A DNA stretch of 64,000 bases, taken from positions 124,001 to 188,000 of IMG/VR virus record IMGVR_UViG_3300049043_000112. One strand, 5' to 3'. The notes beneath the pieces are model-generated. The model did not search any database and had not been told where the DNA came from. It saw only the letters and a list, made by a program, of their open reading frames with translations. The position numbers were made by a program, and so were the translations under genes. This document shows, piece after piece, positions 16,576 to 36,495 of the stretch. Within the stretch, counting starts at the first letter, position 1, and the number at the start of each line of letters is the position of its first letter.

Positions 16576-16667
16576 TAGGGACACCTGGATTCGAACCAGG
16601 ACCTCGCGGTAATCTGCCGCTAATACAAGGTATAAGCTTGCTGTTCTAACCGTTGAACTATGCCCCC
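16576..16667 (-). tRNA. tRNA with Ile(UAU) anticodon and a 24-nt variable region (92 nt)
   Basis: GGGGGCA/TGTCCCT acceptor, GTTC/GAAC D stem, GCAAG-CTTATAC-CTTGT anticodon arm, variable region ATTAGCGGCAGATTACCGCGAGGT, CCTGG-TTCGAAT-CCAGG T arm. Confidence 0.88.
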
Positions 16668-34188: not shown

Positions 34189-34825
34189 TTAGACCCACTC
34201 CAGAGCTTCGGCAACTGTTGGAAACTGTTCGGTAAACACCTTCTTACATTCCAGAGCAATGTCCATATGCTCTTTCTGAGTACCGTTTGCGGAACGAAGA
34301 TTGATGTAATGAATCCAGGAACGGCAAGAATCCTGTCATGTAAATGCGCGTAGGGGTCGCCAGAGGCAGTACAAACCTTGCACACTCCTTAGCAACTCCG
34401 TGGTCTAGAAGTTCCTTGTAGAGGCGCATAGAGTGTGCAAAATGCTCTTGAATCTTGCTCTGGAGACCCAGTTTCTCATACTCACCAATATCGTCAATCG
34501 AGTTCTGACGATTCTTAGTGTCCTGACGGCGAAGGTCAGGCACAGGAATATATTCACTCAACAGGGAAGAATCAGCATAACGCTGTGAAAACTCTTGGAA
34601 CGTGAAACTACGATGGCGCAGAATCTGTGCTGCAATACCACGGTTCGTTTCAATCTCAAGACTCATAGACGACTGCTCAAAAACAGACCAATGATTGTGC
34701 TTAATACAATAACGTAGCAGACCTGCATAGTTTTCAGAATCTTGATTTGCTGGATTAGAAACCCTAGCAATATACGCCATTGTTTGTTCTGCATCGGGAG
34801 TTACACTGATAAGTTTTACAGTCAT
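34189..34825 (-). CDS. thyX: Flavin-dependent thymidylate synthase ThyX (indel near 34330)
   Basis: [38 protein letters not shown]; the shifted frame continues [17 protein letters not shown]...EALEWV*. Confidence 0.93.
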
Positions 34826-35212: not shown

Positions 35213-35296
35213 TTAATTGAATAAAAACTGAATATAAAGCGATAATAGCATAATTGCAACTGCACAACCTGCGGTAATTTGTAATATCGCAAACAT
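35213..35296 (-). CDS. 27-aa hydrophobic micropeptide
   Basis: MFAILQITAGCAVAIMLLSLYIQFLFN*; start overlaps the upstream stop (TGATG). Confidence 0.55.
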   Translation of the reverse strand: MFAILQITAGCAVAIMLLSLYIQFLFN

Positions 35297-35556
35297 CACT
35301 TTGCACCAACTAGTTGTGCTAATTGTGCTTGATGACGACGCTCTTCTTTTTGTTTTTGTTCTTTAATTAATTGAAGGAAGTTAAGTTTCTTCATTTCCCA
35401 CCTCCCTTGGATTTTTCCATTAGAGAGTTTGTTTCCATTTTCATCCACCCAGAACATTGCTCCGCGATAGATTTCTACGTGTGGTTGAATCTTGAACGTT
35501 TGATTTGGACGTTCAGTAGTGTCATATTCGACACCACGATATACGACTTTAGACAT
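35296..35556 (-). CDS. DUF4278-like small protein, possibly plus a separate basic peptide (MKKLNFLQ..., ATG at 35394)
   Basis: Two YRG(V/A) motifs (VVYRGVEY, EIYRGAMF); strong RBS AAGGAG. A second RBS-like GGAGGTGG before ATG 35394 suggests two genes joined by an indel. Confidence 0.7.
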   Translation of the reverse strand: MSKVVYRGVEYDTTERPNQTFKIQPHVEIYRGAMFWVDENGNKLSNGKIQGRWEMKKLNFLQLIKEQKQKEERRHQAQLAQLVGAK

Positions 35557-35588
35557 TAGGTTTTCTCCTTAATTTTGAGGCTAAAGAG

Positions 35589-35772
35589 CGTTCCTTCAGT
35601 CGGCTTTTGCGTCTAATGGAAAGTTATCCCACCTACAAGTTTTTGGCGAAACATCTTTGATTTGTTGTACGAGTTCTTTTTTAACTTCCAAAGGAAGATT
35701 TTAAGAACCAATATTTGAAATCAAGACATTTGCTTGAAAACAAGTTAATAGCAGAGTTTCCATAGATGAACG
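35589..35772 (-). promoter_or_regulatory. Glutamine-riboswitch-like aptamer 2 (glnA / Downstream-peptide family) with expanded P2
   Basis: CGTTCA-TCTATGGAAA ... TTTCCATTAGA-CGCAAAAGCCGACTGAAG-GAACG; P1 CGTTC/GAACG; directly upstream of the DUF4278-like RBS. Confidence 0.75.
35596..35763 (-). CDS. Small two-Cys ORF nested in aptamer 2 (56 codons; in-frame TAA at codon 21)
   Basis: METLLLTCFQANVLISNIGS*NLPLEVKKELVQQIKDVSPKTCRWDNFPLDAKAD*. Confidence 0.6.
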
Positions 35773-35776
35773 ATTC

Positions 35777-36033
35777 CGTTCCGAGTCGGCTTACTTCCGT
35801 CCTATTGAATTGTTCAGCACTTAAGTCTCACAACATCCTTTCGGAGTTCTAATAGCAATCGGTCTTCTCTTCTTTGGTCTACTACATCGTCGTTTTTAAC
35901 GATGTCCATTAGTTCCCAAGCTGCACCACAACTTATCGTCACTTGAGTATCAGATTTGGTAAGTTGTGGAGTAGAGATAGAAAGAAGTGGAACCCATGCT
36001 AAAAGCAAAAGTGCTTTAGTCATAGGATGAACG
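35777..36033 (-). promoter_or_regulatory. Glutamine-riboswitch-like aptamer 1 with expanded P2
   Basis: CGTTCA-TCCTAT ... ATAGGA-CGGAAGTAAG-CCGACTCG-GAACG; GGAAGTAA is the E-loop-like segment of glnA-type aptamers. Confidence 0.75.
35814..36023 (-). CDS. 69-aa ORF nested in aptamer 1 (signal-peptide-like N-terminus, two Cys)
   Basis: MTKALLLLAWVPLLSIS...SCGAAWELMDIV...LELRKDVVRLKC*. Confidence 0.7.
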   Translation of the reverse strand: MTKALLLLAWVPLLSISTPQLTKSDTQVTISCGAAWELMDIVKNDDVVDQRREDRLLLELRKDVVRLKC

Positions 36034-36043
36034 TTAGAGGGAT

Positions 36044-36097
36044 ATTATACCTCTATTCATTGATATTTAGGGAGTTTTGTGTGTATTTCCTGATACA
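36044..36097 (-). promoter_or_regulatory. Composite promoter: NtcA box, late CTAAATA and -10 TATAAT
   Basis: TGTA-N8-TACA at 36082-36097; CTAAATA at 36070-36064; TATAAT at 36049-36044, 10 nt upstream of aptamer 1. Confidence 0.7.
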
Positions 36098-36156
36098 ATT
36101 TTAAAAACCTTCACACAGGAAAATTTTGCCGGGAAATTTTCCGCCGATTATGGAAA

Positions 36157-36495
36157 TTACTTCCGCTTTTTCCTTTCAGGTGCTTTGTATCCCCAGGTCT
36201 TTGGATTATAACGCCCATATCCAAAGTCGATACTCTTCAAATTTTCACGAAACTTATCCCAATACATATCAAACAATTTAATTCTAGAGCCTCTAGTTAA
36301 ATCGAAACAAAGTTTTTCATCAACCATATACTTGACAATATAAGCATCATTAGGTGCTTCTTTGGTACAGACATCAGCATACGAACCATTCTCAATCATA
36401 ATTTCACAACCGTAACGTGACTTACAGGTTTCTTTTTCTGCTGATGTCCAATAATCCATATCTGTTTCCTTTACTTCATCAACAACTGAACTCAC
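36157..36495 (-). CDS. Hypothetical protein
   Basis: ORF with a GTG start overlapping the upstream stop (GTGA); FDMYWDKF...GYGRYNPKTWGY. Confidence 0.75.
   Translation of the reverse strand: MSSVVDEVKETDMDYWTSAEKETCKSRYGCEIMIENGSYADVCTKEAPNDAYIVKYMVDEKLCFDLTRGSRIKLFDMYWDKFRENLKSIDFGYGRYNPKTWGYKAPERKKRK

What the first reader, a model, noticed from the sequence alone, without database searches (positions are those of the whole stretch)
35596..36023. The two nested peptides look like divergent paralogs of a Cys-clamped helical hairpin
ORF1 (SCGAAWELMDIV...REDRLLLELRK.....KC) and ORF2 (TCFQANVLISNI...VKKELVQQIKD...TC) share C-x2-A-x2-L-[MI]-x2-[VI], then an amphipathic L-x3-[LI]-[RK] helix and a terminal Cys. 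ORF1 has a signal-peptide-like N-terminus. This suggests the aptamer plus ORF duplicated as one cassette and one copy may be exported. ORF2 has an in-frame TAA at 35703-35701 with the frame intact on both sides, so it is either a base-call error or a recent nonsense change.
Basis: partly seen in the sequence, partly recalled or inferred. Interest (0 to 1): 0.6.

Follow-up and report, generated by a model that had tools for sequence, protein, structure and literature searches.

The report
Small protein genes inside riboswitch hairpins
In this freshwater cyanophage, two small two-cysteine protein genes (one intact, one recently broken by a real stop codon) each sit inside a hairpin of a tandem glutamine-sensing riboswitch, a layout common in cyanophages that I did not find described.

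Summary
ORF1 (36023..35814, 69 aa) and ORF2 (35763..35596, TAA at 35703-35701) lie on the minus strand as described.

Both ORFs are nested in the variable hairpin of the two aptamers of a tandem glnA-type glutamine riboswitch. This riboswitch leads a DUF4278/IF17-like gene (35556..35296). A covariance model built only from other phages finds exactly these two split aptamers in the window (55 and 37 bits, next best 13). Rfam finds none of them.

Both ORFs evolve as coding sequence. ORF1 is intact in every relative examined. ORF2 belongs to a broad cyanophage family (303 representative clusters, distantly phrog_504) that is open in nearly all relatives.

The TAA is real: an identical contig from a second sample carries it. 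The sister lineage has CAA there plus its own separate stop, so this is recent decay.

Paralogy is partly supported:
- The insertion site, start-codon offset, Cys-to-Cys spacing and helix-turn-helix prediction all match.
- Profile similarity is weak for ORF1 versus the ORF2 family (P 0.002-0.007) and clearer for the marine position-1 family versus the ORF2 family (P 4e-5).

Export of ORF1 is plausible but untested.

The proposed mechanism is inferred, not shown: aptamer folding and initiation at the nested start codons exclude each other.

The parts
36046..36051 (-). TATAAT, candidate -10 box of the leader transcript (inferred)
   Evidence: Read directly. Contigs from two metatranscriptome runs cover 35300-36047 but give about zero depth at 36048-36217, while a DNA run covers both stretches. 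The consensus scan did not call it because there is no -35 match.
35775..36035 (-). Aptamer 1 of the tandem glnA-type glutamine riboswitch, split by a 209-nt insert. P1 strands are CGUUC 36033-36029 and GAACG 35781-35777. The hairpin-closing stem is UCCUAU 36027-36022 with AUAGGA 35805-35800. The core GGACGGAAGUA lies at 35802-35792.
   Evidence: Model R1, built without the window, scores 36.7 bits, E 2.3e-7, and 41.3 bits in the genome search. The MFE of 35776-36040 forms P1 and the closing stem, z -2.1. Compact homologous aptamers occur in S-CREM1 and S-SRM01.
35814..36023 (-). ORF1, 69 aa, intact. It has a hydrophobic N-terminus (residues 4-17), a variable linker, then Cys32-helix-turn-helix-Cys69. 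The AUG lies 5 nt after the CGUUC P1 strand (3 nt after CGUUCAUC).
   Evidence: 246 tblastn relatives in IMG/VR and 248 protein clusters, all open in the loci examined, with no Pfam or PHROG match. Codon-position differences are 0.069/0.055/0.139. 26 invariant columns. AF2 gives pLDDT 60.5 with helices 5-17, 32-44 and 50-66.
35586..35774 (-). Aptamer 2, split by a 137-nt insert. P1 strands are CGUUC 35772-35768 and GAACG 35593-35589. The closing stem is UCUAUGGAAA 35766-35757 with UUUCCAUUAGA 35622-35612, which covers the ORF2 AUG.
   Evidence: R1 scores 55.2 bits, E 3.8e-12. The MFE keeps P1 and the 10-bp closing stem, z -2.7. About 20 close relatives carry a compact 25-35 nt hairpin at this position.
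35596..35763 (-). ORF2, a member of a widespread cyanophage two-Cys small-protein family, interrupted here at codon 21. Its stop UGA (35598-35596) lies inside the conserved aptamer core GACUGAAGGAACG, and its DAKAD tail is encoded by the aptamer's 3' half.
   Evidence: Homologues are open (49-65 aa) in 28 of the 30 distinct versions seen in the first 80 loci; the exceptions are the window and L071. They are also open in nearly all census loci. Codon-position differences are 0.29/0.17/0.40. The profile search finds 303 representative clusters. AF2 of an intact relative gives pLDDT 86 with helices 8-20 and 25-37.
35701..35703 (-). TAA nonsense codon (codon 21 of ORF2)
   Evidence: An identical sequence, TAA included, occurs in a 236,046-bp contig from a second sample. 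The nearest relative L071 has CAA here and its own TGA at codon 26. All 4 covering contigs of DNA run X2 read G at 35703, which gives CAA.
35768..35781 (-). Junction hairpin GAACG-GAAU-CGUUC, which can pair the 3' strand of aptamer 1 with the 5' strand of aptamer 2 (a candidate anti-aptamer fold)
   Evidence: It forms in the MFE of the whole leader, z -3.2. A 2-5 nt linker is present in every tandem locus retrieved.
35565..35588 (-). Expression platform: CUCUUUAG (35588-35581) pairs with the Shine-Dalgarno region UUAAGGAG (35572-35565) of the downstream gene
   Evidence: Full-leader MFE. The GGAACGCUCU sequence is conserved in most relatives.
35296..35556 (-). Regulated gene: an 86-aa DUF4278 / IF17-like protein
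   Evidence: Pfam DUF4278 E 0.004, below the cut-off. PHROG hits phrog_545 and phrog_5049. The same gene follows the aptamers in S-CREM1, S-SRM01, P-SSM4, P-HM1 and DSL-LC02. The association of glnA aptamers with DUF4278 genes is described in PMC6212724.
35191..35208 (-). Intrinsic terminator that closes the unit
   Evidence: A 6-bp G/C stem followed by a U run.

Best explanation
The minus strand from 36051 to 35191 is one small transcription unit of a freshwater T4-like cyanophage. It runs promoter, tandem glnA-type (glutamine-I) riboswitch, DUF4278/IF17-like gene, terminator. In each aptamer the peripheral variable stem-loop, which follows the CGUUCA strand, has been expanded by a small protein-coding gene. 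ORF1 is an intact member of a tight freshwater family and probably has a cleavable signal peptide. ORF2 belongs to a large cyanophage family. In this phage population it carries a genuine recent nonsense mutation, and the sister lineage carries a different one. The two peptides belong to one architectural class: a hydrophobic N-terminus, Cys, helix, turn, helix, Cys. They are probably ancient paralogues that spread with the modular aptamer units, though sequence evidence for ORF1 versus ORF2 is weak. Inferred mechanism: each nested AUG sits 2-5 nt after the CGUUCAU strand of the ligand-binding helix and inside the hairpin-closing stem. The ORF2-type stop codon lies in the conserved 3' core. 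A ribosome on the nested ORF and a folded, glutamine-stabilised aptamer therefore exclude each other. High glutamine would favour the folded aptamers and the IF17-like gene (as shown for gifB by Klahn 2018). Low glutamine would favour the nested peptides.
For: Anatomy:
- The custom covariance model finds exactly two split aptamers.
- Compact alleles at the same positions in relatives match Rfam RF01739.
- The hairpin-closing stem covaries among alleles: CGG/CCG, CCUC/GAGG, UCGCUAUU/AAUAGCGA, UCUAU/AUAGA.
- MFE folds keep P1 and the closing stems.

Coding:
- The codon-position pattern follows 3rd>1st>2nd, and indels come in whole codons.
- Frames are open in over 100 diverse loci.
- No conserved RNA structure lies inside the insert.
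- AF2 gives pLDDT 86 for the ORF2 type.

Spread:
- Among 80 tandem loci retrieved by a junction pattern, 22 of 78 scorable carry an insert in aptamer 1 and 56 of 76 carry one in aptamer 2, in all four combinations.
- The cultured phages P-SSM4 and P-HM1 carry both inserts.

TAA.

Kinship:
- hhalign of the ORF1 family against the ORF2 superfamily scores 18.8, against 9.7+-2.0 for column shuffles (0 of 150 reach it).
- The marine position-1 family against the ORF2 superfamily scores 25.9, P 4e-5.
- The natural chimera P0289 joins a position-1 N-terminus to a position-2 body at the first Cys.
- Secondary-structure layout matches.

Mechanism: AUG positions and closing stems are read. The gifB switch is described in PMC6212724.
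Against: - No experiment or ribosome data show that either ORF is translated or that the split aptamers bind glutamine.
- Rfam itself gives no hit in the window.
- ORF1 against the ORF2 family reaches only 6-14% hhalign probability. ORF1 against the marine position-1 family is not significant (P 0.048; 9 of 150 shuffles reach it).
- The ORF1 AF2 model has low confidence (pLDDT 60.5).
- In the ligand-free MFE of the whole leader both P1 helices are replaced by the junction hairpin, so which fold dominates in vivo is unknown.
- ORF2 is broken in this phage and absent from many relatives, so it is dispensable.
Confidence: 0.6

Rival explanations
1. ORF1 and ORF2 are unrelated small genes that entered the same permissive hairpin loop independently. 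The shared Cys spacing and motif reflect convergence, or the constraints of the site: the 5' and 3' ends must pair with each other and with the aptamer.
For: The window pair alone is not significant. hhalign probability is 6-14%. PHROGs places the marine position-1 and position-2 proteins in different families, and ORF1 in none. Compact alleles exist at both positions.
Against: The start offset, the Cys...Cys distance (34-37 residues) and the helix-turn-helix layout are the same. The profile score exceeds all 150 column shuffles for two of the three family pairs. The chimera P0289 is joined exactly at the first Cys.
Confidence: 0.3
2. The nested ORFs act mainly as regulatory leader ORFs. What matters is their translation, which unwinds or blocks the aptamers and ends about 40 nt before the DUF4278 start, rather than the peptides themselves.
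For: The start codons lie in the closing stems and the stop codon lies in the aptamer core. ORF2 can be lost or broken without loss of the unit.
Against: Amino-acid conservation is strong: 26 invariant columns in ORF1 and both Cys invariant across 34 diverse ORF2-type sequences. The coding substitution pattern and a confidently predicted fold also argue against it. This rival can coexist with a peptide function.
Confidence: 0.2
3. The inserts are non-coding expansion segments of the aptamer hairpins, and the open frames arise by chance.
For: The inserts fold into long hairpins that bring the aptamer halves together.
Against: Variation is dominated by third positions. Indels come in whole codons. 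Frames are open in over 100 divergent loci. RNAalifold finds no conserved pairing inside the insert.
Confidence: 0.03
4. The TAA is an assembly or base-call error, or it is read through or recoded.
For: The frame is intact on both sides. Every other population sampled has CAA.
Against: Two assemblies from different samples are identical over the 551 nt compared, TAA included. The sister lineage has its own stop five codons later. No suppressor tRNA is among the three tRNAs in the window, and nothing in the genome suggests another code.
Confidence: 0.03

Closest known systems
glnA RNA / glutamine-I riboswitch (Rfam RF01739), including tandem arrangements (Weinberg 2010, PMC2864571; Klahn 2018, PMC6212724)
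   Same: It has the CGUUC/GGAACG ligand-binding helix, the GGACGGAAGUA core and the tandem layout. It sits in the leader of a DUF4278/IF17-like gene. Compact alleles in sister phages match RF01739.
   Different: Each aptamer's peripheral hairpin carries a 137- or 209-nt protein-coding insert whose start and stop codons overlap aptamer elements. Rfam does not detect the aptamers. Aptamer 2 has the variant core GACGCAAAA.
Downstream-peptide / glutamine-II riboswitch (RF01704)
   Same: It is a glutamine aptamer tied to short conserved ORFs of 17-100 codons in picocyanobacteria. The same CGUUC strand lies at the 5' end (PMC6698751).
   Different: In RF01704 the ORF lies downstream of a pseudoknotted aptamer and usually encodes DUF4278. 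Here the ORF lies inside a three-way-junction-type aptamer and encodes a different two-Cys protein. RF01704 gives no hit.
phrog_504 and phrog_6471 (cyanophage proteins of unknown function; T4-GC 429/430/541 in P-SSM4 and P-HM1)
   Same: The marine ORFs at aptamer position 2 match phrog_504 (E 1e-9 to 6e-16) and those at position 1 match phrog_6471 (E 1e-29 or lower). A freshwater ORF2 relative aligns over its whole length with them.
   Different: The freshwater ORF2 type reaches only E 0.089 against phrog_504, and ORF1 matches no PHROG. I found no description of these families as lying inside riboswitch aptamers.
Leader-peptide attenuators and upstream ORFs that couple translation to mRNA folding
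   Same: A short ORF in a structured leader, whose translation must remodel a regulatory fold.
   Different: Here the fold is a metabolite-binding aptamer and the ORF encodes a conserved, foldable protein rather than a codon-sensing leader.

Membership tests
glnA RNA / glutamine-I riboswitch (RF01739) | Long-range helix CGUUC / GGAACG closing the junction, plus a stem-loop directly after CGUUCA | tested here: met
   The R1 model (P1 plus hairpin base, built from other phages) scores 55.2 and 36.7 bits, with no other hit above 13.3 bits in 64 kb. The MFE folds form both helices.
glnA RNA / glutamine-I riboswitch (RF01739) | Conserved core GGACGGAAGUA ... GAAGGAACGC | tested here: met
   Aptamer 1 has the exact GGACGGAAGUA (35802-35792). 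Aptamer 2 has GACGCAAAA ... GACUGAAGGAACGC, the same variant as aptamer 2 of S-CREM1, which Rfam aligns to RF01739.
glnA RNA / glutamine-I riboswitch (RF01739) | Score at or above Rfam's gathering threshold (35 bits) | tested here: not met
   No RF01739 hit in the window even at E<=10. The inserts separate the two halves by 137-209 nt. Compact relatives score 33.5 and 28.9 bits.
glnA RNA / glutamine-I riboswitch (RF01739) | Selective binding of L-glutamine and control of the downstream gene | not testable with these tools
   Needs in-line probing or ITC, and reporter assays.
glnA RNA / glutamine-I riboswitch (RF01739) | Location in the 5' leader of a DUF4278 (IF17-like) or nitrogen-metabolism gene | tested here: inconclusive
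   The downstream 86-aa protein hits DUF4278 at E 0.004, 17.9 bits, below the 25.3-bit cut-off. Orthologous genes follow the aptamers in five cultured phages.
Downstream-peptide / glutamine-II riboswitch (RF01704) | Pseudoknot architecture detected by the Rfam model | tested here: not met
   No RF01704 hit at E<=10. The topology here is the three-way-junction type.
phrog_504 (ORF2 family) | Significant match to the family profile | tested here: inconclusive
   The intact freshwater relative L094 scores E 0.089 over residues 6-48. Marine members score 2e-9 to 6e-16. All align with both Cys invariant, and one profile recovers 303 clusters.
Sec-type signal peptide (ORF1) | Basic n-region, hydrophobic h-region of 10-15 residues, small residues at -3/-1 | not tested
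   By eye: MTK, then a 13-residue hydrophobic run, then S-x-S/A before T-P. The variable linker comes after it. AF2 predicts a helix at 5-17 followed by disorder. No predictor was available.
One superfamily for ORF1 and ORF2 (paralogy) | Profile-profile similarity beyond chance | tested here: inconclusive
   hhalign gives P 0.0019 (19 columns) and 0.0067 (23 columns), with probability 14% and 6%. The score exceeds all 150 column shuffles. The marine position-1 family against the ORF2 superfamily gives P 4e-5, probability 69%.

The most novel reading that the evidence does not exclude
Cyanophages have turned the glutamine riboswitch into a two-output device. Protein-coding genes embedded inside the aptamer hairpins would be translated only while the aptamer is unfolded (low glutamine). 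The IF17-like gene downstream would be translated when the aptamer is folded (high glutamine). One RNA would then choose reciprocally between two sets of small proteins according to the host's nitrogen state. The aptamer-plus-ORF units would shuffle among phages by recombination at the conserved aptamer halves.
Probability: 0.3. Interest if true: 0.85.

Novelty: new variant of a known kind. Interest (0 to 1): 0.7.

Why it matters
Riboswitch aptamers are treated as non-coding. Here a conserved protein gene lies inside the aptamer, with its start codon in an aptamer stem and, for the ORF2 type, its stop codon in the ligand-binding core.

If both layers work, this is a new regulatory logic: translation competes with the ligand-bound fold. 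It would also be a new class of phage small proteins tied to host nitrogen status.

There is a practical consequence as well. Standard Rfam scans miss these split aptamers, so glutamine riboswitches are under-counted in phage genomes. One survey, for example, reported them as rare in phages (PMC9004378). The layout is present in the cultured phages P-SSM4 and P-HM1, so it can be tested directly.

Tried and rejected
- **Rfam.** Gathering and E<=10 scans of the window, and RF01739 over the whole 236-kb genome, gave no riboswitch. This is explained by the inserts.
- **Pattern matches.** Hits to GGACGGAAGTA elsewhere in the genome are chance sites inside coding sequence.
- **tblastn of ORF1 against cultured phages:** nothing.
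- **Family and structure searches.** Pfam, PHROGs (for ORF1), PDB sequence search, Foldseek against PDB and the ESM Atlas feature search gave nothing beyond noise. The weak STb_secrete hit (E 0.09) is chance level.
- **Cellular genomes.** The exact aptamer-2 3' half occurs in only 2 of about 185,000 species genomes. One is a 3.8-kb contig binned into an Acetobacteraceae MAG. The other is a 189-kb contig in a Prochlorococcus single-cell assembly, equal in length to an IMG/VR viral record. I take both to be phage DNA.
- **Reads.** Only Logan contigs were available, and the best holder X1 does not cover 35606-35911. Raw-read support for the TAA in the source sample could therefore not be obtained. 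A second sample's assembly was used instead.
- **thyX.** A side look compared the neighbouring ORF (34244-34825) with the S-SRM01 gene annotated 'thymidylate synthase'. No significant similarity came out, and the matter was dropped.
- I redid it by reading the stored files.
- **Script machine lost.** Three steps were not done: superposing the two AF2 models, measuring the Cys-Cys distance, and a tree of aptamer-plus-ORF units.
- **Typed structure.** No typed dot-bracket structure was sent. The RNAalifold default gave the intended P1 plus hairpin base.
- **Genetic code.** No alternative code was named. The ORF2 stop was carried as X in alignments.

Full report
**1. What is at the coordinates.**

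On the minus strand, the ORF listing and the sequence give ORF1 at 36023..35814 (69 aa). A second frame starts at 35763 and runs to 35596, with a single in-frame TAA at 35703-35701. For this one pair the similarity is not beyond chance: local alignment p=0.026, and a global alignment anchored on the cysteines z=1.8, p=0.06 against shuffles.

**2. The context is a tandem glutamine riboswitch.**

The window comes from a 236-kb IMG/VR virus record, a T4-like cyanophage whose nearest cultured relative is S-SRM01.

Rfam finds no riboswitch here, either at gathering score or at E<=10. In the relatives S-CREM1 and S-SRM01, however, the homologous stretch matches RF01739, the glnA glutamine riboswitch. 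It lies in tandem and directly upstream of the same small gene.

The window shows the same two aptamers, each split. In both, the CGUUCAUC strand is followed within three bases by an AUG. The ORF comes next, and then the 3' half of the aptamer. The 3' half is GGACGGAAGUA...GGAACG for the first aptamer and GACGCAAAA...GACUGAAGGAACGC for the second.

To test this reading I built a covariance model from 16 aptamers of other phages, 11 compact and 5 with inserts, none from the window. RNAalifold gave the P1 helix plus the base of the hairpin as consensus. With filters off, the model finds exactly two full-length matches in the 64 kb:
- 35586-35774 at 55.2 bits, E 4e-12;
- 35775-36035 at 36.7 bits, E 2e-7.

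The next best hit scores 13.3 bits. The same two are the only matches in the whole genome.

The inserts, 137 and 209 nt, sit in the loop of the peripheral stem-loop. This is P2 in glutamine-I numbering (PMC6698751). Minimum-free-energy folds of each split aptamer keep P1 and a closing stem, with z -2.1 and -2.7.

Downstream lie an anti-SD/SD pairing and an 86-aa gene with a sub-threshold DUF4278 match (E 0.004). A strong terminator follows at 35208-35191. DUF4278/IF17-like genes are the known targets of glutamine riboswitches (PMC6212724).

**3. Both inserts are genes.**

*ORF1.* It has 246 tblastn relatives in IMG/VR and 248 protein clusters, 71-100% identical. It is open in all 80 fetched loci and always starts 3 nt after CGUUCAUC. 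Pairwise differences by codon position are 0.069/0.055/0.139. The aligned family has 26 invariant columns, and the variable stretch is confined to residues 16-27.

*ORF2.* In the same loci aptamer 2 is either compact (a 25-35 nt hairpin, about 20 loci) or carries a 153-182 nt insert. That insert encodes a 50-59 aa protein in 28 of the 30 distinct versions. Codon-position differences are 0.29/0.17/0.40. RNAalifold finds no conserved pairing inside the insert, only P1 and a few invariant, non-covarying pairs.

*Census.* I retrieved 80 tandem loci by a pattern across the junction between the aptamers, not by the ORFs.
- Aptamer 1 is compact in 56 loci and carries a 190-227 nt insert in 22.
- Aptamer 2 is compact in 20 and carries a 120-255 nt insert in 56.
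- All four combinations occur.

Nearly every insert is an open frame starting 2-5 nt after CGUUCAU, with two cysteines about 33-46 residues apart. ORFs at position 2 end in ...DAKAD, with the UGA stop inside GACUGAAGGAACG. Marine ORFs at position 1 end in ...GRK, with the UAA inside GGACGCAAGUAA.

*Cultured phages.* P-SSM4 and P-HM1 carry both nested ORFs, annotated as hypothetical proteins. DSL-LC02 and S-SRM01 carry only the second. S-CREM1 carries neither.

*Family breadth.* A profile of 34 diverse ORF2-type proteins recovers 303 representative clusters in 1.84 billion, almost all 44-116 aa. The marine members are phrog_504 and phrog_6471, both of unknown function. Foldseek places the model among uncharacterised proteins of many cultured cyanophages. 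The exact aptamer-2 3' half occurs in only two records of the species-genome collection, and I take both to be phage DNA.

I found no paper describing ORFs inside these aptamers.

**4. The TAA.**

A 236,046-bp contig from a different sample is identical over the 551 nt compared, TAA included. The nearest distinct relative, L071, has CAA at that codon and its own TGA five codons later. All four contigs of an unrelated DNA run that cover the site read CAA.

The TAA is therefore a real, recent nonsense allele. ORF2 appears to be decaying in this sub-lineage.

This is also the sub-lineage in which a 15-nt 3' extension lengthens the closing stem to 10 bp across the AUG. That may have silenced the ORF first; this step is inference.

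**5. Are the peptides paralogues?**

*In favour:*
- The ORFs occupy the same insertion site in equivalent aptamers, with the same start offset.
- The layout is the same: a hydrophobic N-terminus, Cys, about 35 residues, Cys.
- AF2 predicts a helix from the first Cys, a short turn and a second helix in both. For an intact ORF2 relative the helices are 8-20 and 25-37 (pLDDT 86). For ORF1 they are 32-44 and 50-66 (pLDDT 60.5, low confidence).
- With enlarged families, hhalign gives ORF1 family against ORF2 superfamily a score of 18.8, P 0.0019. Column shuffles average 9.7+-2.0 and 0 of 150 reach the observed score.
- The marine position-1 family against the ORF2 superfamily scores 25.9, P 4e-5, spanning Cys to Cys.
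- A natural protein, P0289, joins a position-1 N-terminus to a position-2 body exactly at the first Cys.
- Arrays with three aptamers exist, for example L143.

*Against:*
- hhalign probabilities for ORF1 are only 6-14%.
- ORF1 against the marine position-1 family is not significant (P 0.048; 9 of 150 shuffles reach it).
- PHROGs keeps the families apart.

I put common ancestry at roughly 0.6.

**6. How it may work (inferred).**

The nested AUG lies partly or wholly in the hairpin-closing stem:
- window aptamer 1: UCCUAU/AUAGGA;
- window aptamer 2: UCUAUGGAAA/UUUCCAUUAGA;
- P-SSM4: UCCUAUG/CAUAGGA.

It also lies only a few bases from the P1 strand. A folded aptamer should therefore hide the start codon, and an initiating or elongating ribosome should prevent P1 from forming.

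During transcription the 5' strand and the AUG emerge 140-220 nt before their pairing partners. This gives ribosomes a head start.

The published gifB riboswitch turns translation on when glutamine is bound (PMC6212724). By analogy, high glutamine would favour the IF17-like protein and low glutamine the nested peptides.

In the ligand-free MFE of the whole leader (z -3.2), a junction hairpin GAACG-GAAU-CGUUC replaces both P1 helices, and CUCUUUAG pairs with the SD. This is a plausible OFF state.

Contigs from two metatranscriptomes cover the unit up to about 36047 and not beyond. That fits a start just after the TATAAT, but contigs cannot prove a 5' end.

What the peptides do is unknown. ORF1 has the shape of a Sec signal peptide with a conserved small-x-small site. 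Export would allow a disulfide staple between its two cysteines.

**7. Verdict.**

- The paralogue and cassette reading is partly supported.
- The TAA question is resolved as a real, recent nonsense mutation.
- The larger result is that protein-coding genes nested in riboswitch aptamer hairpins are common in cyanophages, are missed by Rfam, and as far as I could find are undescribed.

**Limits.** There is no binding, translation or export data. The ORF1 model has low confidence. The script machine was lost, so the two models were not superposed and no tree of the units was built.

Noticed in passing
L143:6503-6836: A three-aptamer array: a compact aptamer, then an aptamer with a position-1-type nested ORF, then a compact aptamer. 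The SD, a DUF4278-like gene and a terminator follow.
   Followed up: partly
P0289 (68 aa): A natural chimera. The N-terminus of the marine position-1 family is joined at the first Cys to the body and DAKAD tail of the position-2 family. A deletion or recombination between the two nested ORFs of one array would produce this.
   Followed up: no
P0251 (116 aa): A gene call in which an ORF2-type protein runs on through the position of the UGA (read as W) and continues in frame into the DUF4278-like protein. This is either a stop-loss fusion or a gene call made under another code.
   Followed up: no
window 35768-35781 (-): The 3' strand of aptamer 1 and the 5' strand of aptamer 2 can form a 5-bp hairpin with a 4-nt loop. 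It wins in the full-leader MFE. A 2-5 nt linker is present in every tandem locus retrieved, so the alternative pairing may be part of the switch.
   Followed up: partly
window 35213-35299 (-): A 28-aa, very hydrophobic ORF overlaps the end of the DUF4278-like gene and ends just before the terminator. P-SSM4 and P-HM1 have similar short hydrophobic ORFs at the same place.
   Followed up: no
window 35925-35927 (-), ORF1 residue 33: The window's ORF1 has Gly directly after the first Cys. All 27 aligned relatives have Asp or Asn there.
   Followed up: no
window 16576-16667 (-): The tRNA called Ile (anticodon UAU) is 92 nt long with a 21-nt extra arm, which is unusual for an Ile tRNA. It sits in a cluster with tRNA-Met and tRNA-Leu(UAA).
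   Followed up: no
L212 and L213: The phage aptamer sequence occurs on a 3.8-kb contig binned into an Acetobacteraceae MAG from a lake. It also occurs on a 189,106-bp contig of a Prochlorococcus single-cell assembly, equal in length to an IMG/VR viral record. Both look like phage DNA filed under cellular genomes.
   Followed up: no
ORF2 family proteins: Some source annotations name these 50-aa proteins 'indole-3-glycerol phosphate synthase' or 'maleate cis-trans isomerase'. No family scan supports these names, and they look spurious.
   Followed up: no
run X1, loose end at window 35602: The best DNA holder carries a variant in which aptamer 2 has the compact hairpin instead of ORF2. Alleles with and without the insert may therefore co-occur in lake-water samples.
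   Followed up: no
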